64,000 bases of DNA, taken from positions 5,766,001 to 5,830,000 of the forward strand of contig NW_025963968.1 of the NCBI RefSeq assembly GCF_023055435.1, given 5' to 3'. The position numbers were made by a program, and so were the translations under genes. Shown here one piece after another: positions 17,064 through 63,894 of this stretch. The DNA is from Haliotis rufescens (Eukaryota). A model generated the notes under the pieces. That model ran no database searches, was not told the origin of the DNA, and saw nothing but the letters and a program-made list of their open reading frames with translations. Position 1 is the stretch's first letter. Each line of letters starts with the position of its first letter.

Positions 17064-17247
17064 CGTCACAGTGGACACTGTGCATTCTCGGTGTGTGACA
17101 GGTGATAGATTCCTCTCCCTCCTCCGTTGTCCGGCCCATCACGATGACTGTTGACGGGTGGACAAGGGAGGTATATAAACCAAGACGGCCGTCACCAGTA
17201 TCATTCCTTCTCCACCCTCGTCAACAGCAGACCAACAACAGCAACTG
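17064..17247 (+). promoter_or_regulatory. Gene A promoter and non-coding exon 1
   Basis: TATATAAA at 17172-17179, Inr-like TCATT at 17201, donor g|GTGAGT after 17247, upstream element cgtcacagtggacactgt at 17064-17081. Conserved in the inverted copy of gene B. Confidence 0.8.
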
Positions 17248-17464
17248 GTGAGTTCAATGATTGCTTGTAGCCGCTTAATATCGCCAATACAGTTCTTCTC
17301 CCAATGGTCCTAGATATTTGGACAAATACTTTGTACATATGACCTTCTGAAACGTAAGACCGAGTTAACGCAGATGTTTCGATACACTAAGAGAAAAGTT
17401 ACAAATGAATGAATGATGTAGAATCATGGCGGCATAAGGTACACTGGGTGTACTCAGGTAGTAA

Positions 17465-18725
17465 TTGTCTACCACGTGTGGTATATGATGTGCTGTATAT
17501 AAGGAAGTTTATTTCCATCCATTCTTCATATATCTGCTAAATTGGTTGGGTAAAGTTATTACCACGTGTGGTATTGGGGGTGCTGTGTTTAAGGAAGCTT
17601 GTATCCAGCCATTCTACATATATCTGCTTACTTGTTTGGATTAAGTTATTACCACGTGTGGTATAGGGTGTTCTGTGTTTAAGGAACCTTGTATCCATCC
17701 ATTCTACATATATCTGCTTACTTGGTTGGATTAAGCTATTACCACGTGTGGTATAGGGTGTGATGTGTTTAAGGAAGCTTGTACCCATCCATTCTACATA
17801 TATCTGCTTACTTGGTTGGATTAAGTTATTACCACGTGTGGTATAGGGTGTGCTGTGTTTAAGGAAGCTTGTACCCATCCATTCTTCATATATCTGCTTA
17901 CTTGTTTGGGTTAAGTTATTACCACGTGTGGTATAGGGTGTGCTGTGTTTAAGGAAGCTTGTACACATCCATTCTACATATATCTGCTTACTTGGTTGGA
18001 TTAAGTTATTACCACGTGTGGTATAGGGTGTGCTGTGTTTAAGGAAGCTTGTACCCATCCATTCTACATATATCTGCTTACTTGGTTGGATTAAGCTATT
18101 ACCACGTGTGGTATAGGGTGTTCTGTGTTTAAGGAAGCTTGTACCCATCCATTCTACATATATCTGCTTACTTGGTTGGATTAAGTTATTACCACGTGTG
18201 GTATAGGGTGTGCTGTGTTTAAGGAAGCTTGTACCCATCCATTCTTCATATATCTGCTTACTTGTTTGGGTTAAGTTATTACCACGTGTGGTATAGGGTG
18301 TGCTGTGTTTAAGGAAGCTTGTACACATCCATTCTACATATATCTGCTTACTTGGTTGGATTAAGTTATTACCACGTGTGGTATAGGGTGTGCTGTGTTT
18401 AAGGAAGCTTGTACCCATCCATTCTTCATATATCTGCTTACTTGTTTGGATTAAGTTATTACCACGTGTGGTATAGGGTGTGCTGTGTTTAAGGAAGCTT
18501 GTACACATCCATTCTACATATATCTGCTTACTTGTTTGGATTAAGTTATTACCACGTGTGGTATAGGGTGTGATGTGTTTAAGGAACCTTGTACCCATCC
18601 ATTCTTCATATATCTGCTTACTTGTTTGGATTAAGTTATTACCACGTGTGGTATAGGGTGCGATGTGTTTAAGGAAGCTTGTACCCATCCATTCTTCATA
18701 TATCTGCTTACTTGGTTGGGTTAAG
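17465..18725. repeat. 90-bp minisatellite (~14 units) in intron 1 of gene A
   Basis: Unit ttaagttattaccacgtgtggtatagggtgtgctgtgtttaaggaagcttgtacccatccattctacatatatctgcttacttggttgga. Confidence 0.95.
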
Positions 18726-18894
18726 TTTTGTACTGGTCATATTTCTAGGTTTACCATATGCGTGTCTTAGAGTTTACGAAAGTGGTAAACATTTGACTTT
18801 CCTCCCACGTGTATATGATCTGATCCATGATATAACTACCTCACTCTTCAGTCTCACGTGTGAAAATTCCCAACACGTGACACAGTGGTTCATG

Positions 18895-19120: not shown

Positions 19121-19215
19121 ATCGTACCATGGCCACAGGGCGGTCTGTATTAATAAGTTATGTTTCTATATGTTATGTTGTTTGCAGAAAGCCTACCGGA
19201 CAACAAACAGGTGCT

Positions 19216-22200
19216 ATGAGAACGACCACCATCTTGGCCATGGCCGTACTAGGCTGTTGCTGTCTTGTGACCGACGCTTTCGTAATTGGTACGTACATTC
19301 CTACCATGTGTCATCAAGAGCATACTGTTTCCTGAGTTGTCCATAGATCCAGCTGGCATGCGACGGAACTGCTTCATGATGCGGCCATAAAACTGTCTGA
19401 GTTCCCCAGTCGTCTAGGACGTCGGAGACCTCACGTCGGCTTCCCGCCCACATCAAACTAACACGCCATGATATAGCTGGAATACTGTTCAAAACGGCTT
19501 TGAACCAGCCTCACTCACTTTGTGGAGAATATTTCCAAATTTGACGTATCAGTGACTCAAAATTATGTCCGATGCAATTTCCTGTTGTGACATCAGTGGC
19601 GCAGGATAGGCTCACCCAGCATCATCGATATTTGATTGTGATTCATAAGGGTATTTGGCGTCATTTGTAAAAGTATGGTATGCATTATCTTGTATGAAAG
19701 ACTATCTACTTTCTAAGTTCAGGGAGCACAGGCGGCCCAGTCGTGTAAGGCGTCGCACTTCACTGTGCCGAGCCGTGTCCCTTCGGCGCGCACAAATCAT
19801 GTGGTGGTCGGGTTCGAATCAAAGCTTTGCTCTGAAAAACATTCTAGGTGTGTCTGCAGCTTTCACGTGGGCGTCGCCAAAATGGTATTCGTCAAAGATC
19901 TGCATCACCTTGACATCCATTTCAATCCTCTCTTTATTCCCTCATAAGCTTATTTGTCACAATGTAGCTNNNNNNNNNNNNNNNNNNNNNNNNNNNNNNN
20001 NNNNNNNNNNNNNNNNNNNNNNNNNNNNNNNNNNNNNNNNNNNNNNNNNNNNNNNNNNNNNNNNNNNNNNNNNNNNNNNNNNNNNNNNNNNNNNNNNNNN
20101 NNNNNNNNNNNNNNNNNNNNNNNNNNNNNNNNNNNNNNNNNNNNNATTTTCAGTTGTATGAAGATACTGCGCATTGTATCATCAGTCAAACAATACAGAG
20201 ATTAAAACCATAATCAAGCCACTGTATGAAATCAAACGATTTTCATTTATTCGAGTACAGCTGTACTCGGTTCATTAGTGTGCAAACAGGTCATGAGTAT
20301 AATGCGTCGTGAGTACACGTCGGCTTTCCTCCCACATCAAACTTACACGCCATGGTGTAGCTTGAATGCTGATCAAAACGGCGTTGAACCAAGCTCACTC
20401 ACTGACTTTGTGGAGAACAGAAATCAAAAGATTTTCATTAATTCGAGTACCAGCTGTATTCGGTTCAGTGATGTGCAAATAGGTCATACGAATAATGCGG
20501 TGACGAAAAAATGTTCTCAGCCGATTCAGTGGTATTTCCATTTGCATTTTGTAATAATCTGTCAAAGAATTTAACAACAGGTGTTACCGACGGGACAGGA
20601 TGCTCACCTTAGTGAGTAAATATGGTTTTAATTTTACTACAGGTGCCACAGGTGGGTAGGAAATGCTCACCTTAGGGCGAACACCTGGTATCATCACTTC
20701 TGGTAGTGATCCATAAACATATGCCTATCATGTAGTCTGAATCGCACAATGAACTCTGCTTTTAGCTGACATTTCTTATGATTATGAAATAGGGAGTTGT
20801 CGCTTGTACTTAGTTTGAATTTTGGTCTTTTTGCAGGTTCCCAATATGGCACCAATCCTGACAATCAACTGATAAATCGCAGGCAAGTTCCAGGATTTGG
20901 ACGTCAAGTCATCTACAATCCCACTAGGGCAACCCGAGGAAAAGACATAAAGTCCACTCAAGTCAAACAGGTTGCTCCTGCTCGACCAACCCCACAAGCC
21001 CCACAAGCTCAGAAAGTCTACCCTCCAGCCCCACAAGCTCAGAAAGTCTATCCCCCAGCCCCACAAGCTCAGAAAGTCTACCCTCCAGCCCCACAAACTC
21101 AGAAAGTCTATCCCCAAGCCCCACAAGCTCAGAAAGTCTATCCCCCAGCCCCACAAGCTCAGAAAGTCTATCCCCAAGCCCCACAAGCTCAGAAAGTCTA
21201 TCCCCCAGCCCCACAAGCTCAGAAAGTCTATCCCCCAGCCCCACAAGCTCAGAAAGTCTATCCCCCAGCCCCACAAGCTCAGAAAGTCTATTCCCCAACC
21301 CCACAAGCTCAGAAAGTCTATGTCCTAGCCCCACAGCCCCAGTATGTCCTTGCCAATGGCCTACCTGATCACTACGGTTCCCAGATCGATCAAGGATACG
21401 ACACTCAGCCTATATATGCTTCCAACAGAATCACACTTAGACACCAACCCTTCCCCCAGAATACTATCATCATCATCAAGGAGGACTCCCCTAATCCCCG
21501 TGGTGCTTCCGCCCCAGCACAGGCTCAAGCCCCACTCGCGCCAGCCCCTGCTTCAATCGTAATCGATGCCCCTACCCCTGTCTCTGCCCCTGCCCCTTCC
21601 CACATCTCATTAGACCCTTTCTCTGCCCCTCTCCCAACAGACCCTTTCTCAGCCGCTGGTCCAAACTTTGCAGACCCTTTCTCTGCTCCTCTCCCAACGG
21701 ACCCTTTTTCTGCCGCTGGCCCAAACTTTGCAGACCCTTTCTCTGCCCCTCTTCCAACAGACCCTTTCTCAGCCGCTGGCCCAAACTTTGCAGACCCTTT
21801 CTCAGCCTTTTTCCCTGCAGACCCTTTCTTTGATCCCACCACAGCCTCTGCAGACCCTTTCTCCCTATCGTACCCTGTAGATCCACTCGCTGCCCCCACA
21901 TCTGCGCCAGCTAAAACAGCAGCTTCCCCACAGGTACCCATCCCAGAACCCAACTCTCCAGCAGGGGCAGCATCTGGCCTCTACCCTGGTGCTTCCCAAC
22001 GTGGATACGACGCCCTCGACAGCATGTTGAGACTTAACATGCTCGCTGAAATGGAGCTTCCTCACTATGGAGGACATCACAACTTGCACCAGCTCACTGA
22101 AACCCTTGGAGCACCTGCCAGCAAGGGTGCGGCTCAGTATCAAGCTTCCAAGTCCTCTTCCCTGGGTCACCAGAACCAGTACGATCGCTTGTTCTCACAG

Positions 22201-22485
22201 CACCTCGCTGAGGCACTAGACCTTCCTCCACAACAAGGCCACCCAGCGTCAGGTGCTACCCACAATGCACCCCTCGCTAACAACCCCAACGTAGCTGTGT
22301 CACAAGCAGCAGCAGCAGCGGCACCGGCAGCTGCACCAGCACCAGAACCGACAGCAGTAAAGGCAGCATCACCAGCAGCTAAACCAGCTGGAGGTCACCA
22401 TGGTTACAACCCTTATGACCTCTACTCCATGCATCTCCGAGAGGCTCTTGACCTGCCTCCTATGCCCCCTATGCCTCGCGTGTGA
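19216..22485 (+). CDS. Gene A: secreted Pro/Ala/Gln-rich repetitive protein, 573 aa, join(19216..19288,20837..22485)
   Basis: Acceptor tttgcAG before 19188, ATG 19216, signal peptide MRTTTILAMAVLGCCCLVTDA, donor GTACGT at 19289 (phase 1), acceptor ctttttgcAG before 20837 in frame with the 562-aa ORF. Contains 11x PQAQKVYPPA, 3x 20-aa DPFSA repeats and 3 C-terminal LAEALDLP-type motifs. AATAAA at 22669. An N gap lies in intron 2. Confidence 0.9.
19970..20146. other. Assembly gap (177 N) in intron 2 of gene A
   Basis: Run of N. Confidence 1.
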
Positions 22486-26624: not shown

Positions 26625-28799
26625 TCACACGCGAGGCATAGGGGGCATAGGAGGCAGGTCAAGAGCCTCTCGGAGATGCATGGAGTAGAGGTCATAAGGG
26701 TTGTAACCATGGGGACCTCCAGCTGGTTTAGCTGCTGGTGATGCTGCCTTTACTGCTGCCGGTGCCGCTGCTGCTGCTGCTGCTTGTGACACAGCTACGT
26801 TGGGGTTGTTAGCGAGGGGTGCATTGTGGGTAGCACCTGACGCTGGGTGGCCTTGTTGTGGAGGAAGGTCTAGTGCCTCAGCGAGGTGCTGTGAGAACAA
26901 GCGATCGTACTGGTTCTGGTGACCCAGGGAAGAGGACTTGGAAGCTTGATACTGAGCTGCACCCCGGCTGGCAGGTGCTCCAAGGGTTTCAGCGAGCTGG
27001 TGCAAGTTGTGATGTCCTCCATAGTGAGGAAGCTCCATTTCAGCGAGCATGCTGAGTCTCAACATGTTGTCGAGGGCGTCGTATCCACGTTGGGAAGCAC
27101 CAGGGTAGAGGCCAGATGCAGCCCCTGCTGGAGAGTTGGGTTCTGGGATGGGTACCTGTGGGGAAGCTGCTGTTTTAGCTGGCGCAGATGTGGGGGCAGC
27201 CAATGGATCTACAGGGTTAGATAGGGAGAAAGGGTCTGCAGAGGCTGTGGTGGGATCAAAGAAAGGGTCTGCTGGGAAAGGGGCATTGAAAGGGTCTGCA
27301 AAGTTTGGGCCAGCGGCTGAGAAAGGGTCTGTTGGGGTAGGGGCATCGATTACGATTGAAGCAGGGGCTGGGGCGAGTGGGGCTTGAGCCTGTGCAGGGG
27401 CGGAAGCACCACGGGGATTAGGGGAGTCCTCCTTGATGATGATGATAGTATTCTGGGGGAAGGGTTGGTGTCTAAGTGTGTTTCTGTTGGAAGCATGTAT
27501 AGGCTGAGTGTCGTATCCTTGATCGATCTGGGAACCGTAGTGATCAGGTAGGCCATTGGCAACGACATACTGGGGCTGTGGAGCTGGGGGATAGACGTTT
27601 TGAGTTTGTGTGGCTGGGGGATAGACTTTCTGAGCTTGTGGGGCTGGGACATAGACTTTCTGAGCTTGTGGGGCTGGGGGATAGACTTTCTGAGCTTGTG
27701 GGGCTGGTCGAGCAGGAGCAACCTGTTTGACTTGAGTGGACTTGATGGCTTTTCCTCGGATTGCTCTAGTGGGATTGTAGATGACTTGACGTCCAAATCG
27801 TGGAATTTGACGGCGATTTATCAGTTGAATGTAAGGATTGATGCCATATGGGGAACCTGCAAGAAGACCAAAATGCAATGTAGGTACAAGCGACAACTCC
27901 ATATTTCATAATCATAAGAAATGTCGGCTAAAAGCAGAGTCCATTGTACGATTCCGACTACATCAGAAGTGATGATACCAGGTGTTCGCCCTAAGGTGAG
28001 CATTATTACTACCTTAGGCTAAACGCAGAGTCCATTGTACGATTCAGACTACACCAAAGGCATATGTTTATGGATCACTATCAGAAGTGATGATACCAGG
28101 TGTTCGCCCTAGGATGTGCAGGGGCGGTCGGGTAGCCCAGTGGTTAAACCGTTCGCTCGTCACGCCGAAGACCCGGGTTCGATTTCCGACATGGGTACAA
28201 TGCGTGAAGCCCATTTCTGGTGTCCCCCGCCGTGATATTGCTGGAATATTGCTAAAAGCGGCGTAAAACAATACTCACTAAGGTGAGCATCCTGTCCCGT
28301 CGGTAACACCTGTTGTTAAATTCTTTGACAGATTATTACAAAATGCAAATGGTAATACCACTGAATCGGCTGAGAACATTTTTCGTTCCGTATTATCTTC
28401 ATGCACATCCCTGAACTTAATATAGCTGGTACTCGAATTAATGAAAATCTTTTGATTTCTGCTCTCCACAAAGTGAGTGAGTGAATTTGGTTCAACGCCA
28501 TTTTGAACAGTATTCCAGCTATATCATGGCGTGTTAGTTTGATGTGGGAGGAAAACCGACGTGAGGTCTCCGACGTTTATGCACAGCGTGCGACGTCCTA
28601 GACGAAGGGGGAACTCAGACAGAATTATGGCCGCATCATGAAGCAGTTCCGTCGCATGCCAGCTGGATCTATGGACAACTCAGGAAACAGTATGTTCTTG
28701 ATGACACATGGTAGGAATGTACGTACCAATTACGAAAGCGTCGGTCACAAGACAGCAACAGCCTAGTACGGCCATGGCCAAGATGGTGGTCGTTCTCAT
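26625..28799 (-). CDS. Gene B: paralogue of gene A, secreted Pro/Ala/Gln-rich protein, 434 aa, complement(join(26625..27856,28727..28799))
   Basis: The 73-nt coding part of exon 2 is identical to gene A and the splice sites are the same. It has 4 decapeptide repeats and a reduced DPF block. AATAAA (minus) at 26434-26439. Confidence 0.9.
28121..28279 (+). mobile_element. SINE family 1 in intron 2 of gene B (absent from gene A)
   Basis: Full-length copy inserted in gttcgccctaaggtgagc. Confidence 0.9.
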
Positions 28800-29024
28800 A
28801 GCACCTGTTTGTTGTCCGGTAGGCTTTCTGAAAACAACACGTCAACAAATAAAATCAGTACTTGTTAATACTGACCGACCCAAGTGAGTCAGTTACGAGT
28901 GATTCAGTTATATCATGGCTCAGATCTTAAACATGTGGGAGGAAAGTCCAAAATTTTACCACTTTCGTAAACTCTCAGACACGTATATGGTACTGACAAA
29001 CCTCGAAACATGACCAGTACAACA

Positions 29025-30089: not shown

Positions 30090-30299
30090 CAGTTGCTGTT
30101 GTTGGTCAGCTGTTGACGAGGGTGGAGAAGGAATGATACTGGTGACGGCCGTCTTGGTTTATATACCTCCCTCGTCCACCCGTCAACAGTCATCGTGATG
30201 GGCCGGACAACGGAGGAGGGAGAGGAATCTATCACCTGTCACACAACGAGAATGCACAGTGTCCACTGTGACGCAAGACAGTTCAATGTATGCATTGTT
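30090..30299 (-). promoter_or_regulatory. Gene B promoter and non-coding exon 1
   Basis: Near-identical reverse complement of 17038-17247. TATA at 30158-30165, donor after 30090. Confidence 0.8.
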
Positions 30300-33228: not shown

Positions 33229-33356
33229 ACAGTGACCATTGTTACGTCACTGTGTCACGATGCTCCCTGAAGGATGTCCGGCTGGTGTATAAAAGTATTC
33301 CTCATTTCTCTGGACACCATCATTCTCCAATTGTAGCCACAGAGCAGCAGCAACAG
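33229..33356 (+). promoter_or_regulatory. Gene C1 promoter and non-coding exon 1 (equivalent TATA boxes at 41413, 46403, 51571, 56738, 61906)
   Basis: TATAAAA at 33288-33294, Inr-like TCATT at 33320, donor cag|GTGAGC after 33356, CRE-like site upstream. Confidence 0.8.
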
Positions 33357-47500: not shown

Positions 47501-47531
47501 TTACAGAACAGAAATTACAACCACCCGAATC

Positions 47532-48826: not shown

Positions 48827-48880
<54 letters not shown>

Positions 48881-51800
48881 ATATATATATAGATATACAT
48901 ATAGATATGCCTATATTTTATTGACATTAGTGATAAATACTTTTCAATTGAAGGATATTCGCAGTTATATATTTATAAACATAATGTGCATATTCTATTT
49001 TCTCTACTTACATTGTGCCATTGAGTTAAGCTTAAACCGAGGTTTTCAGGTAATGATGGTATGGTTCAATGATTTGTAACTATTTAAACATAAATAATAA
49101 TGATAATAATAATAATAATAATAATAATAATTCTATAATACTACACATAATTCATTACACACCATGCATTGCACTTATATAATTACACACCATGCATTAC
49201 ACTTATATAATTACCCACTCTTAATCACACTACCGCACTCTAGTGGGCGGAGCTTATACGAGTGATCTGACAGGTCAATATGACGTCTTGATAACACACG
49301 CATTTCATTGGTTAATGCCTAACGGGAGACGTCATTTAAACACCCACCCACGTGGACCGTTTGACAACAAGGACGTAAGTTTTAAAAGTAATAAATATCT
49401 ATCAAACGATTCCAAGACTTTTCAACAAACGCGTAGGTCTTTGGTTTCAAAACCTTCACACCTTCATAAAATGATAGCGCGGAATGTCCACGATTTATCC
49501 AACGTACTCCAACACAGAACTTATAGATGTTCTCGTTCTGAGCTATATTCTAGATCTCTGGACCCGGTTGTATCAAAGCCTCATTAACTAATCGCTACAT
49601 TAAACCCTAATGATACATTAAATGCTTAATGCACCATTAGTTAATGCATCATTAAAGTTTGATACAACCGGGTCCTGGACGAGAACGAAATACGTTTGTC
49701 GTGATGAATATGAGCAGTGTAATTGAACATAAAACATAATAAGTGTTACGGCATCAATCGTTATCCTGTGGTGTACGGTATATATGCAGTTTATAAATAA
49801 CATTTCTCACAATATATACGGCAATCGGTGATTTCAACAGTGTTTTTCTTCGTTGTGTTCGTCTTGCCGCATCTGGAATCTGGATGACAATGATCGTGTA
49901 AAAAACCCTGGTAATGGTAAAAAATATTTTCAAAGTAGTTTTTTGTCGTTTCCGTGACATTTTTTTATTGCCCAGTAGCAATGTATTTTGGTCAAAGTCA
50001 CACTTGTCCGATGAAGCGCCTCATGCCGAAGTAACTCGATCCGTGAAACTTGGCGGATCTCAGTGACCCAGATCCCTCTTGATTGGCATGCCAAGTGGCA
50101 TTTGCATAAGGCCATCCATATTTTTTGTATGTGTTTCTCCCCTCAAGCCTCAACTAACCAGAGAGCGGGTGGACGAAATAAAATATATTACTTATCAAAA
50201 AATGTCTTATTTTAAGTTATTTTAAGACATTTAAAAAAAAGGTTTAACACTTCGTACTAGAATCTAGTCTATGAATTAATTTTTGATGTAGATCGATTCG
50301 CTTTGCTTCGGAAACGAATTTTGAATAAACAACGGAACAAAGATAAAGTTGACCTGGTTCTTTTATGACGGTGCAATGGTAGATCTAGTAGTATTTCTTT
50401 TATTAGATCGGTGCGCAATTTTCCACAGCGGCAGCAAAATTGAGACACGAAGACATTATATTATTTCACGTCGGAATGGAGATAAAAATATTTTAAAAAA
50501 TACGGACAGCCTCACAGACTTCGAAATGATGTTCAGATAAATGTTGACTGTTGAATGCAAATGACCAAAACTAAACAAATATCTGTAATTTTCGGATTAA
50601 ACTGATAGAATCGCTATGTCAATTTCGTATTTAAGTATCGTTACTGTTACATGAACCGAAACTGATGTTCTGCTGCAGTTCTGCCGTAAAAATATACAAC
50701 ACAATACACTTTGACCACAAATGCATTCATTTTTTAATGTGTCACATGTATACATGACCATGTGCTTTGCTATTTATAGCGCAACCGTAAATAAGCTCCG
50801 CCCACTGTGATTGATGCAGACGCCAAACACGATCGATTCGATTTTTTATGATAAAACTACAGAAAATTTATTGACTTATATCTTGATATGGATCCATTTT
50901 TGGGATCCATGGTTTGTCATTCAAGTTAATACGAAGTTTGACGGTCAATGGTGATCTGGTTCCCGTATGGTTTTCAAAAGACTTCTCCCGACACTCGGTT
51001 GTGTTTACATTGTCAGTCATTGTTCGAAACTGAAACACCGCCACCTTGCGGGCTATTTATAGTCAGGGTGGGGCTTTAAACACTTTTCCATAAGTATGAA
51101 AGTGACCATTTCAAGTTGGAAATCTTATAAAATTACATTCAGGAATCATTCATCAGCTGTATAGGATGTCAACATTAAAGCAATTCATTTTTTCATCTTG
51201 TCACGGGTTGTTCTAGGCAAAACTATAGTTTTACACACTGTGCATTCCTTAAAATCTTTGTATGACAGGCATTCGTGTTAGTCACTGTCAATGAATATGT
51301 AATTGTAGTTAAATCTATTGATGAACCTGTAATTGTTTTTGTCTAAATCCTGCCTCGGGATATTTTCATCTCGTTGATGGGTACAAGGAGGCTTGATTTA
51401 TGATGGACGTCTTGTTATATGTAAGAACATAGTAGCATTTCATACTTACATCACAAACGAATTTGACTGTCCAACCAATACAGGCATGGTATTGTCAGGG
51501 TAAGTTGCATGACAGTGACCACTGTGACGTCACTGTGTCACGATGCTCCCTGAAGGATGTCCGGCTGGCGTATAAAAGTATTCCTCATTTCTCTGGACAC
51601 CATCATTCTCCAATTGTAGCCACAGAGCAGCAGCAACAGGTGAGCCAACTGTTTGTTATATTTTCTTTTCAATTTATCTTTTCTTGTAAACCGACTGTGG
51701 AGTCTAATATCGCTTGTATACTTGATGTATTCACGTGTCATGTTCTTCAGCATCCTTATATTATTGTGTATTAAGTACCTTTCCGTTAGAGATCGCCCCT

Positions 51801-52699
51801 TGGAAACAGCGGAAGGTCCGGGCTTCGATCCTTGGCCACGTCAAACCAAAATACACAAAAAAGATGATACTTGTTGTTACCCTGTCTGGCGCTCGGCATT
51901 AAGGGGCTAAAGCAAGGAGTGGTCGGCTCAGAGTCAGTATACTGTGTCTGAGTGTGGTATTCATGTCAAGGGACGACCGGGTAGCCTGGTGGTTAAAGCT
52001 CATAAGAAATATCCATTGTGCGATTCAGACTACATCATAGGCATATCTTTATGGATCACTATCAGAAGTGATGATACCAGGTGTTCGCCCTAGGATTTGC
52101 AGGGGCGGTCGGGTAGCCCAGTGGTTAAAACGTTCGCTCGTCACGCCGAAGGCCCGGGTTCGATTTCCGACATGGGTACAATGTGTGAATCCCATTTCTG
52201 ATGTTCCCCGCCGTGATATTGCTGGAATATTGCTAAAAGCGGCGTAAAACCATACTCACTCACTCACTATTCATGTTAAACTGCGGCAGTGCCAGTGGGC
52301 TAGCACTATAAAATCGGCATTAGTCCGGACTAGTACAAGCAAACACACACAAACACACACGTGCATACATGTCACTATATGAGTGCAATAATTTTGAAAG
52401 CGTCATTAAACCCCATTTTACCTCACCACCTGTTCGGGAGATGTAAATATATGTGTGCGAATGTGTCATTTGTTAGCTTTCATAAAATCTCAGTCAGTCA
52501 ATGTAAATGGTAAACTCTGAACCAAAGCAAATATAATAGTCGCCTAACCATAACTACACTTCAACGTGTGTTGTCATTATGTTTGTTGATATAACTTGCA
52601 TTAAATATTACTTTTCAATATGCTATATCATCTTGCATTGAACATTATTGTTCGTTATACATTCACTTTTACAGAACAGAAATTACAACCACCCGAATC

Positions 52700-53559
52700 A
52701 TGAGGACGGCTATAATTCTACCTGCTGCCATCCTGGCCTGTTTGTGTGTCATAAGTGATGCCCGTTACATTCGTAAGTATTGAAGTCAATCGCATCGTCA
52801 TACTCACTACCCGGAGCAAAAAAATATGAAATTTATTGATGTCCCTCTGAGTCGTTTAACTACTCATTACCTCTAGCAAATATTGGGTATTCTTCCTTAT
52901 TCCTGACTGTTGACCTCCTATCATCAGTGTGTTTTAACAATGATTCGTTGATGGAAATCGTTATGATTTTATTGTCTCCATCCTTCTGGACTTTCATGGG
53001 CCATACACACTATCATGCATACCTCTGAGGAACTGACGGCAGAGGACCAATATAGTTGTTAAACCGTTGGCTGTTCAATCTCAAAACTTTGTTTCCGACA
53101 TTGAAACAATGTGGGACACCCTTTCTTTTGTGATCGTAGAAGTCATGTTGCCGAAAACGCCATACTCACTCACTCTAATACCTAGGCGATTTAATTCCAG
53201 GTGCCTCAGGATTGCAAGTGCAGCCCAGGACTGTCAAAGGGTATGCCAACCAACAACCCAGGGTGATTATCATCAACCAAGACAAACCTAGGCAGGCTGC
53301 ACGGGTACCTACTGCTGCACGATCTGGATACGCACCACGACACGGCAACGGATACAACAACTTCCTCAACGACTACCTCCTTGCTGATGCCCTTGATATC
53401 AACCATCCCGGTCTATTGCACGGCTTCAACCAGATTGCCTCCCCTTACGCCCCCTCCGCCCGTACAGGTAGAAACAGCTACGACCCTCTCTACGCTGCGC
53501 TCATCTTGGACCAGCTTGACGCTCAGCCAATTGGAGCCAGCTCCGCCATCGTTGGTTAG
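52700..53559 (+). CDS. Gene C4, 143 aa, join(52700..52772,53201..53559)
   Basis: Same structure; carries the QDKP variant. Confidence 0.9.
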
Positions 53560-53994
53560 ATGATGTGCTTTCAACGAAAAATGTTTTCTCGGAGTGACAT
53601 GAGACGGATTTTTTTTAGTTTTGAGTTTTTGAGATTATGCTTTTGTGTCATGGTTTCTGTCTAATGAAATAAAATGTTTAATTGATTACCTTGCATTCAT
53701 TGTTATCGATTGTTCCACCACACTCACTGTATCGGTATGGTCTTGAATGTATGTATACATATGTATATTTATATGGCACTACTTGTAAATGGGGTGAGAA
53801 TATTAAAGAGAATTTCATCGCACCGAACACATCATACGAACATACACTACACACTATGAATCACACAGCACATTACACATTATACATTATACATTAAGGT
53901 CATACACTACAAGTTAAGTCAAAGCACGTGATGCAGGGAAGACATATGTACATATGCTCACACTTATAGACATAGATATGTTCAGTGCATTGGT

Positions 53995-54051
<57 letters not shown>

Positions 54052-54266
54052 TATACATATACATATAGATATGCCTATATTTTATTGACATTAGTGATAA
54101 ATACTTTTCAATTGAAGGATATTCGCAGTTATATATTTATAAACATAATGTGCATATTCTATTTTCTCTACTTACATTGTGCCATTGAGTTAAGCTTAAA
54201 CCGAGGTTTTCAGGTAATGATGGTATGGTTCAATGATTTGTAACTATTTAAACATAAATAATAATG

Positions 54267-54298
<32 letters not shown>

Positions 54299-57200
54299 TC
54301 TATAATACTACACATAATTCATTACACACCATGCATTGCACTTATATAATTACACACCATGCATTACACTTATATAATTACCCACTCTTAATCACACTAC
54401 CGCACTCTAGTGGGCGGAGCTTATACGAGTGATCTGACAGGTCAATATGACGTCTTGATAACACACGCATTTCATTGGTTAATGCCTAACGGGTGACGTC
54501 ATTTAAACACCCACCCACGTGGACCGTTTGACAACAAGGACGTAAGTTTTAAAAGTAATAAATATCTATCAAACGATTCCAAGACTTTTCAACAAACGCG
54601 TAGGTCTTTGGTTTCAAAACCTTCACACCTTCATAAAATGATAGCGCGGAATGTCCACGATTTATCCAACGTACTCCAACACAGAACTTATAGATGTTCT
54701 CGTTCTGAGCTATATTCTAGATCTCTGGACCCGGTTGTATCAAAGCCTCATTAACTAATCGCTACATTAAACCCTAATGATACATTAAATGCTTAATGCA
54801 CCATTAGTTAATGCATCATTAAAGTTTGATACAACCGGGTCCTGGACGAGAACGAAATACGTTTGTCGTGATGAATATGAGCAGTGTAATTGAACATAAA
54901 ACATAATAAGTGTTACGGCATCAATCGTTATCCTGTGGTGTACGGTATATATGCAGTTTATAAATAACATTTCTCACAATATATACGGCAATCGGTGATT
55001 TCAACAGTGTTTTTCTTCGTTGTGTTCGTCTTGCCGCATCTAGAATCTGGATGACAATGATCGTGTAAAAAACCCTGGTAATGGTAAAAAATATTTTCAA
55101 AGTAGTTTTTTGTCGTTTCCGTGACATTTTTTTATTGCCCAGTAGCAATGTATTTTGGTCAAAGTCACACTTGTCCGATGAAGCGCCTCATGCCGAAGTA
55201 ACTCGATCCGTGAAACTTGGCGGATCTCAGTGACCCAGATCCCTCTTGATTGGCATGCCAAGTGGCATTTGCATAAGGCCATCCATATTTTTTGTATGTG
55301 TTTCTCCCCTCAAGCCTCAACTAACCAGAGAGCGGGTGGACGAAATAAAATATATTACTTATCAAAAAATGTCTTATTTTAAGTTATTTTAAGACATTTA
55401 AAAAAAAGGTTTAACACTTCGTACTAGAATCTAGTCTATGAATTAATTTATGATGTAGATCGATTCGCTTTGCTTCGGAAACGAATTTTGAATAAACAAC
55501 GGAACAAAGATAAAGTTGACCTGGTTCTTTTATGACGGTGCAATGGTAGATCTAGTAGTATTTCTTTTATTAGATCGGTGCGCAATTTTCCACAGCGGCA
55601 GCAAAATTGAGACACGAAGACATTATATTATTTCACGTCGGAATGGAGATAAAAATATTTTAAAAAATACGGACAGCCTCACAGACTTCGAAATGATGTT
55701 CAGATAAATGTTGACTGTTGAATGCAAATGACCAAAACTAAACAAATATCTGTAATTTTCGGATTGAACTGATAGAATCGCTATGTCAATTTCGTATTTA
55801 AGTATCGTTACTGTTACATGAACCGAAACTGATGTTCTGCTGCTGTTCTGCCGTAAAAATATACAACACAATACACTTTGACCACAAATGCATTCATTTT
55901 TTAATGTGTCACATGTATACATGACCATGTGCTTTGCTATTTATAGCGCAACCGTAAATAAGCTCCGCCCACTGTGATTGATGCAGACGCCAAACACGAT
56001 CGATTCGATTTTTTATGATAAAACTACAGAAAATTTATTGACTTATATCTTGATATGGATCCATTTTTGGGATCCATGGTTTGTCATTCAAGTTGATACG
56101 AAGTTTGACGGTCAATGGTGATCTGGTTCCCGTATGGTTTTCAAAAGACTTCTCCCGACACTCGGTTGTGTTTACATTGTCAGTCATTGTTCGAAACTGA
56201 AACACCGCCACCTTGCGGGCTATTTATAGTCAGGGTGGGGCTTTAAACACTTTTCCATAAGTATGAAAGTGACCATTTCAAGTTGGAAATCTTATAAAAT
56301 TACATTCAGGAATCATTCATCAGCTGTATAGGATGTCAACATTAAAGCAATTCATTTTTTCATCTTGTCACGGGTTGTTCTAGGCAAAACTATAGTTTTA
56401 CACACTGTGCATTCCTTAAAATCTTTGTATGACAGGCATTCGTGTTAGTCACTGTCAATGAATATGTAATTGTAGTTAAATCTATTGATGAACCTGTAAT
56501 TGTTTTTGTCTAAATCCTGCCTCGGGATATTTTCATCTCGTTGATGGGTACAAGGAGGCTTGATTTATGATGGACGTCTTGTTATATGTAAGAACATAGT
56601 AGCATTTCATACTTACATCACAAACGAATTTGACTGTCCAACCAATACAGGCATGGTATTGTCAGGGTAAGTTGCATGACAGTGACCACTGTGACGTCAC
56701 TGTGTCACGATGCTCCCTGAAGGATGTCCGGCTGGCGTATAAAAGTATTCCTCATTTCTCTGGACACCATCATTCTCCAATTGTAGCCACAGAGCAGCAG
56801 CAACAGGTGAGCCAACTGTTTGTTATATTTTCTTTTCAATTTATCTTTTCTTGTAAACCGACTGTGGAGTCTAATATCGCTTGTATACTTGATGTATTCA
56901 CGTGTCATGTTCTTCAGCATCCTTATATTATTGTGTATTAAGTACCTTTCCGTTAGAGATCGCCCCTTGGAAACAGCGGAAGGTCCGGGCTTCGATCCTT
57001 GGCCACGTCAAACCAAAATACACAAAAAAGATGATACTTGTTGTTACCCTGTCTGGCGCTCGGCATTAAGGGGCTAAAGCAAGGAGTGGTCGGCTCAGAG
57101 TCAGTATACTGTGTCTGAGTGTGGTATTCATGTCAAGGGACGACCGGGTAGCCTGGTGGTTAAAGCTCATAAGAAATATCCATTGTGCGATTCAGACTAC

Positions 57201-57866
57201 ATCATAGGCATATCTTTATGGATCACTATCAGAAGTGATGATACCAGGTGTTCGCCCTAGGATTTGCAGGGGCGGTCGGGTAGCCCAGTGGTTAAAACGT
57301 TCGCTCGTCACGCCGAAGGCCCGGGTTCGATTTCCGACATGGGTACAATGTGTGAATCCCATTTCTGATGTTCCCCGCCGTGATATTGCTGGAATATTGC
57401 TAAAAGCGGCGTAAAACCATACTCACTCACTCACTATTCATGTTAAACTGCGGCAATGCCAGTGGGCTAGCACTATAAAATCGGCATTAGTCCGGACTAG
57501 TACAAGCAAACACACACAAACACACACGTGCATACATGTCACTATATGAGTGCAATAATTTTGAAAGCGTCATTAAACCCCATTTTACCTCACCACCTGT
57601 TCGGGAGATGTAAATATATGTGTGCGAATGTGTCATTTGTTAGCTTTCATAAAATCTCAGTCAGTCAATGTAAATGGTAAACTCTGAACCAAAGCAAATA
57701 TAATAGTCGCCTAACCATAACTACACTTCAACGTGTGTTGTCATTATGTTTGTTGATATAACTTGCATTAAATATTACTTTTCAATATACTATATCATCT
57801 TGCATTGAACATTATTGTTCGTTATACATTCACTTTTACAGAACAGAAATTACAACCACCCGAATC

Positions 57867-58726
57867 ATGAGGACGGCTATAATTCTACCTGCTGCCATCC
57901 TGGCCTGTTTGTGTGTCATAAGTGATGCCCGTTACATTCGTAAGTATTGAAGTCAATCGCATCGTCATACTCACTACCCGGAGCAAAAAAATATGAAATT
58001 TATTGATGTCCCTCTGAGTCGTTTAACTACTCATTACCTCTAGCAAATATTGGGTATTCTTCCTTATTCCTGACTGTTGACCTCCTATCATCAGTGTGTT
58101 TTAACAATGATTCGTTGATGGAAATCGTTATGATTTTATTGTCTCCATCCTTCTGGACTTTCATGGGCCATACACACTATCATGCATACCTCTGAGGAAC
58201 TGACGGCAGAGGACCAATATAGTTGTTAAACCGTTGGCTGTTCAATCTCAAAACTTTGTTTCCGACATTGAAACAATGTGGGACACCCTTTCTTTTGTGA
58301 TCGTAGAAGTCATGTTGCCGAAAACGCCATACTCACTCACTCTAATACCTAGGCGATTTAATTCCAGGTGCCTCAGGATTGCAAGTGCAGCCCAGGACTG
58401 TCAAAGGGTATGCCAACCAACAACCCAGGGTGATTATCATCAACCAAGACAAACCTAGGCAGGCTGCACGGGTACCTACTGCTGCACGATCTGGATACGC
58501 ACCACGACACGGCAACGGATACAACAACTTCCTCAACGACTACCTCCTTGCTGATGCCCTTGATATCAACCATCCCGGTCTATTGCACGGCTTCAACCAG
58601 ATTGCCTCCCCTTACGCCCCCTCCGCCCGTACAGGTAGAAACAGCTACGACCCTCTCTACGCTGCGCTCATCTTGGACCAGCTTGACGCTCAGCCAATTG
58701 GAGCCAGCTCCGCCATCGTTGGTTAG
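57867..58726 (+). CDS. Gene C5, 143 aa, join(57867..57939,58368..58726)
   Basis: Same structure; carries the QDKP variant. Confidence 0.9.
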
Positions 58727-59161
58727 ATGATGTGCTTTTAACGAAAAATGTTTTCTCGGAGTGACATGAGACGGATTTTTTTTAGTTTTGAGTTTTTGAG
58801 ATTATGCTTTTGTGTCATGGTTTCTGTCTAATGAAATAAAATGTTTAATTGATTACCTTGCATTCATTGTTATCGATTGTTCCACCACACTCACTGTATC
58901 GGTATGGTCTTGAATGTATGTATACATATGTATATTTATATGGCACTACTTGTAAATGGGGTGAGAATATTAAAGAGAATTTCATCGCACCGAACACATC
59001 ATACGAACATACACTACACACTATGAATCACACAGCACATTACACATTATACATTATACATTAAGGTCATACACTACAAGTTAAGTCAAAGCACGTGATG
59101 CAGGGAAGACATATGTACATATGCTCACACTTATAGACATAGATATGTTCAGTGCATTGGT

Positions 59162-59216
<55 letters not shown>

Positions 59217-59425
59217 TATACATATAGATATGCCTATATTTTATTGACATTAGTGATAAATACTTTTCAATTGAAGGATATTCGCAGTTATATATTTATA
59301 AACATAATGTGCATATTCTATTTTCTCTACTTACATTGTGCCATTGAGTTAAGCTTAAACCGAGGTTTTCAGGTAATGATGGTATGGTTCAATGATTTGT
59401 AACTATTTAAACATAAATAATAATG

Positions 59426-59466
<41 letters not shown>

Positions 59467-62400
59467 TCTATAATACTACACATAATTCATTACACACCAT
59501 GCATTGCACTTATATAATTACACACCATGCATTACACTTATATAATTACCCACTCTTAATCACACTACCGCACTCTAGTGGGCGGAGCTTATACGAGTGA
59601 TCTGGCAGGTCAATATGACGTCTTGATAACACACGCATTTCATTGGTTAATGCCTAACGGGTGACGTCATTTAAACACCCACCCACGTGGACCGTTTGAC
59701 AACAAGGACGTAAGTTTTAAAAGTAATAAATATCTATCAAACGATTCCAAGACTTTTCAACAAACGCGTAGGTCTTTGGTTTCAAAACCTTCACACCTTC
59801 ATAAAATGATAGCGCGGAATGTCCACGATTTATCCAACGTACTCCAACACAGAACTTATAGATGTTCTCGTTCTGAGCTATATTCTAGATCTCTGGACCC
59901 GGTTGTATCAAAGCCTCATTAACTAATCGCTACATTAAACCCTAATGATACATTAAATGCTTAATGCACCATTAGTTAATGCATCATTAAAGTTTGATAC
60001 AACCGGGTCCTGGACGAGAACGAAATACGTTTGTCGTGATGAATATGAGCAGTGTAATTGAACATAAAACATAATAAGTGTTACGGCATCAATCGTTATC
60101 CTGTGGTGTACGGTATATATGCAGTTTATAAATAACATTTCTCACAATATATACGGCAATCGGTGATTTCAACAGTGTTTTTCTTCGTTGTGTTCGTCTT
60201 GCCGCATCTAGAATCTGGATGACAATGATCGTGTAAAAAACCCTGGTAATGGTAAAAAATATTTTCAAAGTAGTTTTTTGTCGTTTCCGTGACATTTTTT
60301 TATTGCCCAGTAGCAATGTATTTTGGTCAAAGTCACACTTGTCCGATGAAGCGCCTCATGCCGAAGTAACTCGATCCGTGAAACTTGGCGGATCTCAGTG
60401 ACCCAGATCCCTCTTGATTGGCATGCCAAGTGGCATTTGCATAAGGCCATCCATATTTTTTGTATGTGTTTCTCCCCTCAAGCCTCAACTAACCAGAGAG
60501 CGGGTGGACGAAATAAAATATATTACTTATCAAAAAATGTCTTATTTTAAGTTATTTTAAGACATTTAAAAAAAAGGTTTAACACTTCGTACTAGAATCT
60601 AGTCTATGAATTAATTTATGATGTAGATCGATTCGCTTTGCTTCGGAAACGAATTTTGAATAAACAACGGAACAAAGATAAAGTTGACCTGGTTCTTTTA
60701 TGACGGTGCAATGGTAGATCTAGTAGTATTTCTTTTATTAGATCGGTGCGCAATTTTCCACAGCGGCAGCAAAATTGAGACACGAAGACATTATATTATT
60801 TCACGTCGGAATGGAGATAAAAATATTTTAAAAAATACGGACAGCCTCACAGACTTCGAAATGATGTTCAGATAAATGTTGACTGTTGAATGCAAATGAC
60901 CAAAACTAAACAAATATCTGTAATTTTCGGATTGAACTGATAGAATCGCTATGTCAATTTCGTATTTAAGTATCGTTACTGTTACATTAACCGAAACTGA
61001 TGTTCTGCTGCTGTTCTGCCGTAAAAATATACAACACAATACACTTTGACCACAAATGCATTCATTTTTTAATGTGTCACATGTATACATGACCATGTGC
61101 TTTGCTATTTATAGCGCAACCGTAAATAAGCTCCGCCCACTGTGATTGATGCAGACGCCAAACACGATCGATTCGATTTTTTATGATAAAACTACAGAAA
61201 ATTTATTGACTTATATCTTGATATGGATCCATTTTTGGGATCCATGGTTTGTCATTCAAGTTGATACGAAGTTTGACGGTCAATGGTGATCTGGTTCCCG
61301 TATGGTTTTCAAAAGACTTCTCCCGACACTCGGTTGTGTTTACATTGTCAGTCATTGTTCGAAACTGAAACACCGCCACCTTGCGGGCTATTTATAGTCA
61401 GGGTGGGGCTTTAAACACTTTTCCATAAGTATGAAAGTGACCATTTCAAGTTGGAAATCTTATAAAATTACATTCAGGAATCATTCATCAGCTGTATAGG
61501 ATGTCAACATTAAAGCAATTCATTTTTTCATCTTGTCACGGGTTGTTCTAGGCAAAACTATAGTTTTACACACTGTGCATTCCTTAAAATCTTTGTATGA
61601 CAGGCATTCGTGTTAGTCACTGTCAATGAATATGTAATTGTTGTTAAATCTATTGATGAACCTGTAATTGTTTTTGTCTAAATTCTGCCTCGGGATATTT
61701 TCATCTCGTTGATGGGTACAAGGAGGCTTGATTTATGATGGACGTCTTGTTATATGTAAGAACATAGTAGCATTTCATACTTACATCACAAACGAATTTG
61801 ACTGTCCAACCAATACAGGCATGGTATTGTCAGGGTAAGTTGCATGACAGTGACCACTGTGACGTCACTGTGTCACGATGCTCCCTGAAGGATGTCCGGC
61901 TGGCGTATAAAAGTATTCCTCATTTCTCTGGACACCATCATTCTCCAATTGTAGCCACAGAGCAGCAGCAACAGGTGAGCCAACTGTTTGTTATATTTTC
62001 TTTTCAATTTATCTTTTCTTGTAAACCGACTGTGGAGTCTAATATCGCTTGTATACTTGATGTATTCACGTGTCATGTTCTTCAGCATCCTTATATTATT
62101 GTGTATTAAGTACCTTTCCGTTAGAGATCGCCCCTTGGAAACAGCGGAAGGTCCGGGCTTCGATCCTTGGCCACGTCAAACCAAAATACACAAAAAAGAT
62201 GATACTTGTTGTTACCCTGTCTGGCGCTCGGCATTAAGGGGCTAAAGCAAGGACTGGTCGGCTCAGAGTCAGTATAATGTGTCTGAGTGTGGTATTCATG
62301 TCAAGGGACGACCGGGTAGCCTGGTGGTTAAAGCTCATAAGAAATATCCATTGTGCGATTCAGACTACATCATAGGCATATCTTTATGGATCACTATCAG

Positions 62401-63034
62401 AAGTGATGATACCAGGTGTTCGCCCTAGGATGTGCAGGGGCGGTCGGGTAGCCCAGTGGTTAAAACGTTCGCTCGTCACGCCGAAGGCCCGGGTTCGATT
62501 TCCGACATGGGTACAATGTGTGAATCCCATTTCTGATGTTCCCCGCCGTGATATTGCTGGAATATTGCTAAAAGCGGCGTAAAACCATATTCACTCACTC
62601 ACTATTCATGTTAAACTGCGGCAATGCCAGTGGGCTAGCACTATAAAATCGGCATTAGTCCGGACTAGTACAAGCAAATACACAGAAACACACACGTGCA
62701 TACATGTCACTATATGAGTGCAATAATTTTGAAAGCGACATTAAACCCCATTTTACCTCACCACCTGTTCGGGAGATGTAAATATCTGTGTGCGAATGTG
62801 TCATTTGTTAGCTTTCATAAAATCTCAGTCAGTCAATGTAAATAGTAAACTCTGAACCAAAGCAAATATAATAGTCGCCTAACCATAACTACACCTCAAC
62901 GTGTGTTGTCATTATGTTTGTTGATATAACTTGCATTAAATATTACTTTTCAATATACTATATCATCTTGCATTTAACATTAATGTTCGTTATACATTCA
63001 CTTTTACAGAACAGAAATTACAACCACCCGAATC

Positions 63035-63894
63035 ATGAGGACGGCTATAATTCTACCTGCTGCCATCCTGGCCTGTTTGTGTGTCATAAGTGATGCCCGT
63101 TACATTCGTAAGTATTGAAGTCAATCGCATCGTCATACTCATTACCCGGAGCAAAAAAATATGAAATTTATTGATGTCCCTCTGAGTCGTTTAACTACTC
63201 ATTACCTCTAGCAAATATTGGGTATTCTTCCTTATTCCTGACTGTTGACCTCCTATCATCAGTGTGTTTTAACAATGATTCGTTGATGGAAATCGTTATG
63301 ATTTTATTGTCTCCATCCTTCTGGACTTTCATGGGCCATACACACTATCATGCATACCTCTGAGGAACTGACGGCAGAGGACCAATATAGCTGTTAAACC
63401 GTTGGCTGTTCAATCTCAAAACTTTGTTTCCGACATTGAAACAATGTGGGACACCCTTTCTTTTGTGATCGTAGAAGTCATGTTGCCGAAAACGCCATAC
63501 TCACTCACTCTAATACCTAGGCGATTTAATTCCAGGTGCCTCAGGATTGCAAGTGCAGCCCAGGACTGTCAAAGGGTATGCCAACCAACAACCAAGGGTG
63601 ATTATCATCAACCAAGACAAACCTAGGCAGGCTGCACGGGTACCTACTGCTGCACGATCTGGATACGCACCACGACACGGCAACGGATACAACAACTTCC
63701 TCAACGACTACCTCCTTGCTGATGCCCTTGATATCAACCATCCCGGTCTATTGCACGGCTTCAACCAGATTGCCTCCCCTTACGCCCCCTCCGCCCGTAC
63801 AGGTAGAAACAGCTACGACCCTCTCTACGCTGCGCTCATCTTGGACCAGCTTGACGCTCAGCCAATTGGAGCCAGCTCCGCCATCGTTGGTTAG
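63035..63894 (+). CDS. Gene C6, 143 aa, join(63035..63107,63536..63894)
   Basis: Same structure, QDKP variant. The 3' UTR is cut by the window end. Confidence 0.9.

What the first reader, a model, noticed from the sequence alone, without database searches (positions are those of the whole stretch)
17064..63894. Eight-gene cluster of one hidden secreted-protein family: two long and six short members with identical architecture
Seen in the sequence: genes A, B and C1-C6 all have TATA ~30 nt before a TCATT Inr, and a non-coding exon 1 ending agcaac(t/a)g|GTGAG. Each has exactly 73 coding nt in exon 2 (MRTTTILAMAVLGCCCLVTDA-FVI vs MRTAIILPAAILACLCVISDA-RYI), a phase-1 intron and a single terminal exon. 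The mature chains lack Cys and Trp and share a P-x-x-IIII/III-x-(E/Q)-D-x-P segment followed by an Ala/Pro linker (PQNTIIIIKEDSPNPRGASAPAQA vs PRVIIINQDRPRQAARAPAAA). Inference: this is a single lineage-specific family, probably a co-expressed two-component extracellular material (long scaffold plus dosage-amplified short partner), such as shell matrix, periostracum, mucus or adhesive. I recognise no known domain or gene name.
Basis: partly seen in the sequence, partly recalled or inferred. Interest (0 to 1): 0.85.

Follow-up and report, generated by a model that had tools for sequence, protein, structure and literature searches.

The report
Abalone-only secreted disordered-protein gene cluster
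The window holds eight intact three-exon genes (part of a 13-gene, single-locus cluster in red abalone) for secreted, cysteine-free, mostly disordered proteins found only in abalones; the gene models are right and already in RefSeq as uncharacterised proteins, but what the proteins do is still unknown.

Summary
All eight genes have a TATA box 31-34 nt before a TCATTC start. Each has a short non-coding exon 1, a signal-peptide exon with exactly 73 coding nt, a phase-1 intron and one open terminal exon. The genome is Haliotis rufescens. The assembly gap lies inside intron 2 of gene A, and both its sides are colinear with gene B, so no coding frame depends on it.

The cluster extends past the window: 4 long and 9 short genes in about 90 kb, and none elsewhere in the genome. 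Relatives were found only in other Haliotis species, with no Pfam, PDB or Atlas match.

That long and short genes form one family is likely but not proven. The 5' architecture, signal exon, a palindromic promoter element and colinear hhalign hits support it. BLAST and every HMMER profile test fail.

Both forms are predicted to be disordered, with an Ile-run box and 2-3 short amphipathic helices. An extracellular structural or adhesive role is plausible but untested. The one read-laying run was inconclusive on co-expression, and I found no shell-proteome or literature link.

Verdict: a new member of a known kind, the lineage-restricted molluscan secreted low-complexity proteins.

The parts
17067..17082 (.). 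Palindromic promoter element CACAGTG-NN-CACTGTG of gene A. Equivalents lie at 30255 (B) and at 41365, 46343, 51511, 56678 and 61846 (C2-C6, next to a TGACGTCA site). C1 has a more diverged copy.
   Evidence: 10 matches with at most 1 mismatch in 124 kb, all upstream of family genes, against 0 in 20 shuffles.
17203..17247 (+). Gene A exon 1 (non-coding; predicted start at TCATTC, TATA 31 nt upstream)
19188..19288 (+). Gene A exon 2: 28 nt of 5'UTR plus 73 coding nt (signal peptide), donor GT
19970..20145 (.). Assembly gap, inside intron 2 of gene A, within an A-specific insert of about 790 nt (19529-20315)
20837..22485 (+). Gene A terminal exon (548 codons plus stop). It has 11.3 decapeptide repeats (20997-21335), 3.6 DPF repeats of 20 aa (21612-21829) and three C-terminal helix motifs. 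The poly(A) signal is at 22669.
26625..27856 (-). Gene B terminal exon (409 codons plus stop); poly(A) signal at 26439
   Evidence: (identical to RefSeq model P0004).
28727..28827 (-). Gene B exon 2 (signal peptide, 73 coding nt)
30090..30134 (-). Gene B exon 1 (non-coding)
33322..33356 (+). Gene C1 exon 1 (non-coding, 35 nt)
34264..34361 (+). Gene C1 exon 2 (signal peptide, 73 coding nt)
34772..35130 (+). Gene C1 terminal exon (118 codons plus stop); poly(A) signal at 35223
41447..43219 (+). Gene C2: exon 1 41447-41481, exon 2 42339-42436, terminal exon 42861-43219
46437..48391 (+). Gene C3: exon 1 46437-46471, exon 2 47507-47604, terminal exon 48033-48391
51605..53559 (+). Gene C4: exon 1 51605-51639, exon 2 52675-52772, terminal exon 53201-53559
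56772..58726 (+). Gene C5: exon 1 56772-56806, exon 2 57842-57939, terminal exon 58368-58726
61940..63894 (+). Gene C6: exon 1 61940-61974, exon 2 63010-63107, terminal exon 63536-63894. The 3'UTR runs off the window.
41893..64000 (+). Tandem array of 5168-bp units carrying C2-C6, about 99% identical. It continues beyond the window with C7.

Best explanation
The region is the left two-thirds of a single-locus, abalone-restricted gene cluster in Haliotis rufescens. The whole cluster has 13 genes in about 90 kb: four long genes (A and B in the window, D and E beyond it) and nine short genes (C1-C6 in the window, C7-C9 beyond it).

Shown:
- Every gene has a TATA/Inr promoter, a tiny non-coding exon 1, a 73-nt signal-peptide exon, a phase-1 intron and one terminal exon.
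- The products are secreted, Cys/Trp-free, Pro/Ala/Gln-rich chains without known domains.
- They are predicted to be disordered except for short amphipathic helices, each ending in an LD-(L/I/A)-(P/N/Q) cap.
- The long proteins are block-like. They have a basic N-terminus, a variable Lys/Tyr/Pro decapeptide array (about 4 to 27 copies), an Ile-run box (IIIIKED), acidic DPF repeats and three helix motifs.

Inferred (about 0.8): the long and short genes descend from one ancestral gene. On this reading the short protein is a reduced version that keeps the Ile-run box and two helix motifs. C2-C7 were amplified recently as 5.2-kb tandem units.

Inferred (about 0.5): the proteins are abundant extracellular structural or adhesive matrix components. 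They would self-associate through the Ile-run and helix modules, and the Tyr/Lys/Pro repeats of the long forms would be candidates for cross-linking. Tissue, partners and modifications are unknown.
For: - Gene anatomy. RefSeq models agree with it.
- Cluster size and the lack of members elsewhere in the genome.
- Restriction to Haliotis.
- No known domain or structure.
- Composition and blocks.
- Predicted helices fall exactly on the motifs, and the rest has low pLDDT; the motifs themselves are listed.
- Common origin of long and short: signal exon 39/73 nt, with codon positions 1 and 2 conserved and position 3 at random level. Signal peptides are 12/24 identical, and the h-region shuffle gives p = 0.004. 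The promoter palindrome is shared. hhalign gives two colinear hits, P = 9e-4 and 2.4e-3, and 0 of 150 shuffles reach them.
- Selection: a 24-residue core of the short protein is invariant between H. rufescens and H. asinina although overall identity is 61%. The C1 and C2 coding regions differ by 1.7%, against about 5% in the flanks.
Against: - HMMER profiles do not connect the long and short forms. The C profile against 1.84 billion representatives found no long protein. The long profile against the genome found no C exon at E <= 1. A helix-motif HMM built from long proteins does not score the C motifs. BLASTP gives E about 1.
- There is no expression or proteome evidence for any tissue. Runs X1-X4 hold the C exon, but on B they show only four low-depth pieces and no splice joints, and they are not even certain to be RNA.
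- Family motifs were absent from the searchable text of three abalone shell/mantle data sets.
- The structure models have low confidence (pLDDT 48-52).
Confidence: 0.55

Rival explanations
1. The long and short genes are not homologous over their mature chains. A duplicated 5' module (promoter, exon 1, signal exon) was joined to an unrelated terminal exon. On this view the Ile-run and helix resemblances are compositional or convergent.
For: BLASTP gives E about 1. The C profile finds no long protein. The long profile finds no C exon. The long-derived motif HMM misses the C motifs. hhalign probabilities are only 12-22%.
Against: The two hhalign hits are colinear, in the same order as in the long proteins, and exceed every one of 150 column shuffles. 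The H. asinina short protein has IIIKED-x-P-x-P, which is closer to the long-form box. The second motifs share N-x-Y-D-x-L ... LD-x-x-P.
Confidence: 0.2
2. The proteins are soluble secreted effectors rather than a structural material. Candidates are host-defence peptides or proteins, proline-rich binders of dietary algal polyphenols (like mammalian salivary PRPs), or reproductive secretions.
For: The short proteins are small and basic (pI about 9.5) with amphipathic helices. Tandem amplification and fast divergence are also typical of defence, dietary and reproductive genes. No family motifs were found in the shell-proteome texts.
Against: There are no conserved processing sites and no similarity to known defence or reproductive families. 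The long forms have the block-repeat architecture typical of structural proteins.
Confidence: 0.25
3. One reading: long scaffold and short partner are co-expressed and co-assemble as a two-component material.
For: The promoter palindrome is shared. The Ile-run and helix modules are shared. The genes are tightly linked.
Against: In four runs chosen because they hold the C exon, B is barely represented. There are no interaction or expression data.
Confidence: 0.15

Closest known systems
Lineage-restricted secreted repetitive low-complexity proteins of molluscan secretomes (for example H. asinina mantle genes such as Has-vm2; Jackson et al. 2006/2007, PMC1676022, PMC2034539)
   Same: They have a signal peptide, proline-rich tandem repeats, no homologues outside the genus, fast divergence and tandem gene duplication.
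   Different: There is no sequence similarity. Has-vm2 has 20 Leu/Pro/Ser/Ile motifs directly after the signal peptide. No mantle expression or shell-proteome evidence exists for the present family.
Mussel foot protein 1 / adhesive plaque matrix protein (the RefSeq name given to gene E)
   Same: It is secreted and has a tandem decapeptide array with a Tyr-Pro-Pro core and Lys (Mfp-1 consensus AKPSYPPTYK from established knowledge).
   Different: The consensus is different, with one Tyr and one Lys per repeat. There are only 4-27 repeats, and extra domains are present (Ile box, DPF repeats, helices). No mussel protein was retrieved. DOPA and hydroxyproline are untested.
Vertebrate SCPP genes (amelogenin, enamelin, caseins, salivary proteins)
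   Same: It is a tandem cluster of genes for secreted, Pro/Gln-rich disordered proteins. Exon 1 is non-coding and the signal peptide sits in exon 2. Long and short paralogues occur.
   Different: The lineage is unrelated. SCPP introns are phase 0 (established knowledge), whereas here the intron is phase 1. There is no sequence similarity. This is an analogy only.
Plant/algal hydroxyproline-rich glycoproteins (extensin, Chlamydomonas GP1; RefSeq names of B and the H. rubra homologue)
   Same: Only the Pro/Ala-rich composition.
   Different: There are no Ser-Pro(n) motifs. The names are automatic composition-driven labels.

Membership tests
One family comprising long (A/B/D/E) and short (C1-C9) genes | Same exon-intron architecture: non-coding exon 1, 73-nt coding signal exon, phase-1 intron, single terminal exon | tested here: met
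   all 13 genes have the 73-nt signal exon followed by GT; exon 1 and the promoter were mapped for the eight genes in the window.
One family comprising long (A/B/D/E) and short (C1-C9) genes | Significant sequence or profile similarity of the mature chains | tested here: inconclusive
   hhalign gives P = 9e-4 and 2.4e-3, colinear, with 0 of 150 shuffles reaching them. BLASTP gives E about 1, and the HMMER profiles are negative.
One family comprising long (A/B/D/E) and short (C1-C9) genes | Homologous 5' module (signal exon, exon-1 donor context, promoter element) | tested here: met
   Signal exon 39/73 nt, matching at codon positions 1 and 2. Signal peptides 12/24 identical. Shared exon-1 donor context. 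Shared palindrome.
Mussel foot protein 1 (adhesive plaque matrix protein) | Long tandem array of AKPSYPPTYK-type decapeptides | tested here: not met
   A 30-nt repeat is present (11.3 copies in A, 4.4 in B), but the unit is QAQKVYPPAP-like, and no mussel homologue was retrieved.
Mussel foot protein 1 (adhesive plaque matrix protein) | Tyr to DOPA and Pro to Hyp modification; foot-gland expression | not testable with these tools
   This needs protein chemistry and tissue data.
Molluscan shell matrix proteins | Protein identified in a shell proteome | tested here: inconclusive
   Diagnostic motifs were absent from the H. laevigata supplements (files truncated), the H. asinina shell-proteome text and the mantle-secretome supplements.
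Molluscan shell matrix proteins | Expression in mantle epithelium | not testable with these tools
   Run names are coded and no tissue label was available.
Plant/algal HRGP (extensin, GP1) | Ser-Pro(3-5) repeats | tested here: not met
   No such motif occurs in the translations, and there is no Pfam hit.
Vertebrate SCPP | All introns phase 0; vertebrate SPARCL1-derived cluster | tested here: not met
   The intron after the signal exon is phase 1 (73 coding nt), and the organism is a gastropod.

The most novel reading that the evidence does not exclude
The short proteins are dosage-amplified 'mini' paralogues that keep only the association modules (the Ile-run box and two capped amphipathic helices). 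They dock onto the long block-copolymer proteins and act as chain partners or terminators. Together they would form an abalone-specific two-component self-assembling extracellular material, for example periostracum or a pedal adhesive. Its Tyr/Lys/Pro decapeptides would be enzymatically cross-linked, and the shared palindromic/CRE-like promoter element would co-regulate the genes.
Probability: 0.12. Interest if true: 0.6.

Novelty: new member of a known kind. Interest (0 to 1): 0.35.

Why it matters
If the function were established, this would be a compact, genus-specific model of how a secreted material gene family is born, shortened and dosage-amplified at one locus. It might also be a new source of sequence motifs for biomaterials (Tyr/Lys/Pro decapeptides, capped amphipathic helices). 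As it stands, it is a correctly read but functionally anonymous orphan family, of a type that is common in molluscan genomes and is already present in RefSeq as uncharacterised proteins.

Tried and rejected
- Pfam, the ESM Atlas and PDB sequence profiles gave nothing.
- The profile search of 1.84 billion representatives gave only the query's own cluster and two spurious repeat proteins, a bacterial cadherin-like repeat protein and another repetitive protein.
It showed only repeat-element depth plus four low-depth exonic pieces and no splice joints.
- Run names are coded, so no tissue could be read.
- Literature searches by peptide strings, LOC numbers and RefSeq names found nothing.
- Shell and mantle data sets had no motif hits, and one paper had no supplements held as text.
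- I rejected a neuropeptide-precursor reading. The RR...FGR site in the long N-terminus is not conserved, C-terminal Gly is not conserved in H. asinina, and the bulk of each chain is Pro/Ala-rich.
- dN/dS among the C copies rests on too few changes to interpret.
All searches used terminal exons by reference, and full-length proteins were taken only from the RefSeq models the tools returned.


Full report
**1. Observation**

A six-frame scan finds eight signal-peptide exons. The ATGs are at 19216(+), 28799(-), 34289, 42364, 47532, 52700, 57867 and 63035. In each, 73 coding nt are followed by GT. The string AGCAAC(T/A)G|GTGAG occurs exactly eight times, once upstream of each of them.

A TATA box starts 31 nt (A, B) or 34 nt (C1-C6) before the A of TCATTC. 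This implies a non-coding exon 1 of 45 or 35 nt. The acceptors at 20837, 27856 and 34772, and the equivalents in C2-C6, read ttgcag|G or ttccag|G and continue the open frames listed. Poly(A) signals follow the stops by about 110-190 nt.

The mature chains have no Cys or Trp and are Pro/Ala/Gln-rich.

**2. The gap**

N 19970-20145 lies in intron 2 of gene A. The promoter, exon 1, intron-1 satellite, exon 2, both ends of intron 2 and the terminal exon of A align colinearly and in one orientation with gene B. The gap sits in an A-specific insert of about 790 nt (19529-20315). No coding frame crosses it. The frame between exon 2 and the terminal exon is set by the 73-nt exon, exactly as in B. I did not look for the missing letters.

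**3. Identity of the genome and independent gene models**

The terminal exon of C2 hits a 143-aa RefSeq protein of Haliotis rufescens at 99% identity. It also hits a 148-aa protein of H. asinina at 61%.

The C-terminal half of A hits five Haliotis proteins (rufescens, cracherodii, rubra). One of them, P0004, is 434 aa and is named "vegetative cell wall protein gp1-like". P0001 does the same for the C genes.

Accessions and automatic names are: XP_046340766-771, -773, -776, -777, and XP_048258576 and -577. The window is contig C190:5766001-5830000 of this assembly.

No protein corresponding to A, or to the long gene D, was returned. These two may be unannotated.

All searches used terminal exons by reference.

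**4. Extent of the cluster**

Whole-genome searches with single proteins and with profiles find the family only at this locus. After fetching 60 kb beyond the window, the map is as follows:
- A(+) and B(-), placed tail to tail.
- C1-C7(+), then C8(-) and C9(-).
- D(-), with a terminal open frame of 655 aa and about 27 decapeptides.
- E(-), which is P0005, named "adhesive plaque matrix protein-like".

All 13 genes have the 73-nt signal exon followed by GT.

C2-C6 (and C7) are tandem units of 5168 bp at about 99% identity. C1 is 94-96% identical to them, and a LINE reverse-transcriptase fragment separates it from C2.

**5. Are long and short genes one family?**

Evidence for:
- The 5' architecture is identical.
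- The signal exons align without gaps at 39/73 nt. Matches are 15/24 and 17/24 at codon positions 1 and 2, and 7/24 at position 3.
- The signal peptides are 12/24 identical, including two Cys at the same h-region positions. A within-region shuffle gives p = 0.004.
- The exon-1 donor context is shared.
- A palindrome, CACAGTG-NN-CACTGTG, occurs 10 times in 124 kb with at most 1 mismatch. Every copy is upstream of a family gene (A, B, C2-C7, and two copies before D). None occurs in shuffles.
- Profile-profile comparison gives two colinear local hits. The Ile-run box scores P = 9e-4, and the region with the two helix motifs scores P = 2.4e-3. Both exceed all 150 column shuffles: top score 30.3 against 13.1 +/- 2.2.

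Evidence against:
- BLASTP gives E about 1.
- The C profile does not retrieve any long protein from 1.84 billion representatives.
- The long profile does not hit the C exons in the genome at E <= 1.
- A motif HMM trained only on long proteins misses the C motifs.

I put common descent at about 0.8. The main rival is a shared 5' module joined to an unrelated terminal exon.

**6. What the proteins look like**

The long proteins are built in blocks:
- a basic N-terminus (pI 11);
- a Lys/Tyr/Pro decapeptide array, 11.3 copies in A and 4.4 in B;
- a neutral middle part with the IIIIKED box;
- an acidic DPF-repeat block (pI 4);
- a His/Tyr-containing C-terminal region.

The C-terminal region holds three copies of a motif that ends ...L-(A/R)-E-(A/M)-(L/E)-(D/L)-L-P. 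The short proteins keep a related Ile-run box and two such motifs...ADALDIN and ...DQLDAQP.

AlphaFold models are of low confidence (pLDDT 48 and 52). They place helices exactly on the motifs (residues 53-67 and 95-106 of C; 37-55, 95-109 and 175-186 of the A C-terminal region), and apart from one further short helix and two three-residue strands in the C model they leave the rest without structure.

Between H. rufescens and H. asinina, the first motif of the short protein is invariant over 24 residues, while overall identity is 61%. This points to constraint on the motif.

**7. Function**

Nothing known matches: Pfam, the Atlas and the PDB all gave nothing.

Expression could not be established. 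The run search returned coded names without tissues. Four runs of the same species hold 66-83% of the C-exon words, but they are only guessed to be RNA. Laid on gene B, these runs show huge depth on intronic repeats. In unique sequence they show only four low-depth pieces, all within the terminal exon or 3'UTR of B, and no splice joints. That is weakly compatible with low B expression, but it says nothing firm about co-expression.

Family motifs were not found in the searchable text of the H. laevigata and H. asinina shell proteomes or of the mantle secretome. Searches by name and by LOC number gave no paper.

My best reading is by inference from several features: the signal peptide, the disorder, the block repeats, the Mfp-1-like Tyr-Pro-Pro/Lys decapeptides, the amplification of the short gene, and the pattern usual for molluscan secretomes (PMC1676022, PMC2034539). 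On that basis I read it as an extracellular structural or adhesive matrix family whose members associate through the Ile-run and helix modules. I give this about 0.5. A soluble effector role (defence, dietary polyphenol binding, reproduction) remains open.

**8. Comparison and novelty**

The RefSeq names (gp1-like, adhesive plaque matrix protein-like, extensin-like) are composition-driven. The defining motifs of those families are not present.

The closest kind is the class of lineage-restricted, tandemly duplicated, secreted low-complexity proteins of molluscs. The vertebrate SCPP cluster is an architectural analogue only.

The genes themselves are already annotated. What is new here:
- the full 13-gene map;
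- the likely long/short relationship;
- the shared promoter palindrome;
- the capped-helix motif.

Verdict: a real, well-read, functionally anonymous orphan family of modest interest.

Noticed in passing
window 17470-18727 and 29024-29819: A 90-bp satellite (14 copies in intron 1 of A) recurs in intron 1 of B, where it is organised with 148/290-bp higher-order periods. The introns of the two paralogues thus carry the same satellite with different copy numbers.
   Followed up: partly
window 28118-28391, 29214-29350, 29488-29624: Short interspersed elements in the introns of gene B have k-mer depths of 10^4 to 10^6 in the contig sets of runs X1-X4. They are therefore extremely abundant repeats of this genome or transcriptome.
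   Followed up: no
window 36164-37657: A LINE-type reverse-transcriptase fragment (Pfam RVT_1, E = 5e-17) lies between C1 and C2. It explains the 8075-bp spacing there, against 5168 bp elsewhere in the array.
   Followed up: yes
window 3642-5788, 6027-9092 and 23231-24177: Three large non-coding satellites: a 27-bp unit x 80, a 52-bp unit x 59 with strong negative GC skew, and a 37-bp unit x 26 between genes A and B.
   Followed up: partly
window 19529-20315: An A-specific insert of about 790 nt in intron 2 contains the assembly gap. About 100 nt of intron sequence (the counterpart of B 28563-28463) appears on both sides of it, which suggests an insertion with a local duplication or an assembly problem confined to the intron.
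   Followed up: partly
window 20839-20990 and 27705-27854(-): The N-terminus of the long proteins carries RR followed a few residues later by F-G-R (for example RRQIPRFGR in B). Formally this resembles a dibasic-cleavage plus amidation site for an RFamide-like pentapeptide. It is not conserved (PGFGR in A, absent in D) and is probably coincidental.
   Followed up: partly
G000:C190:5834708-5871970 (beyond the window end): Five more family genes lie here: C7(+), C8(-), C9(-) (137-aa products lacking six C-terminal residues), D(-) with about 27 NVYPPAPRAQ repeats and apparently no RefSeq protein, and E(-).
   Followed up: yes
G000:C334:43152167-43155524 and other contigs: Weak profile hits (E = 1e-3 to 1) cover only the decapeptide-repeat part of the long-protein profile, and many have in-frame stops. 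They look like unrelated proline-rich repeats or decayed copies, not family members.
   Followed up: no
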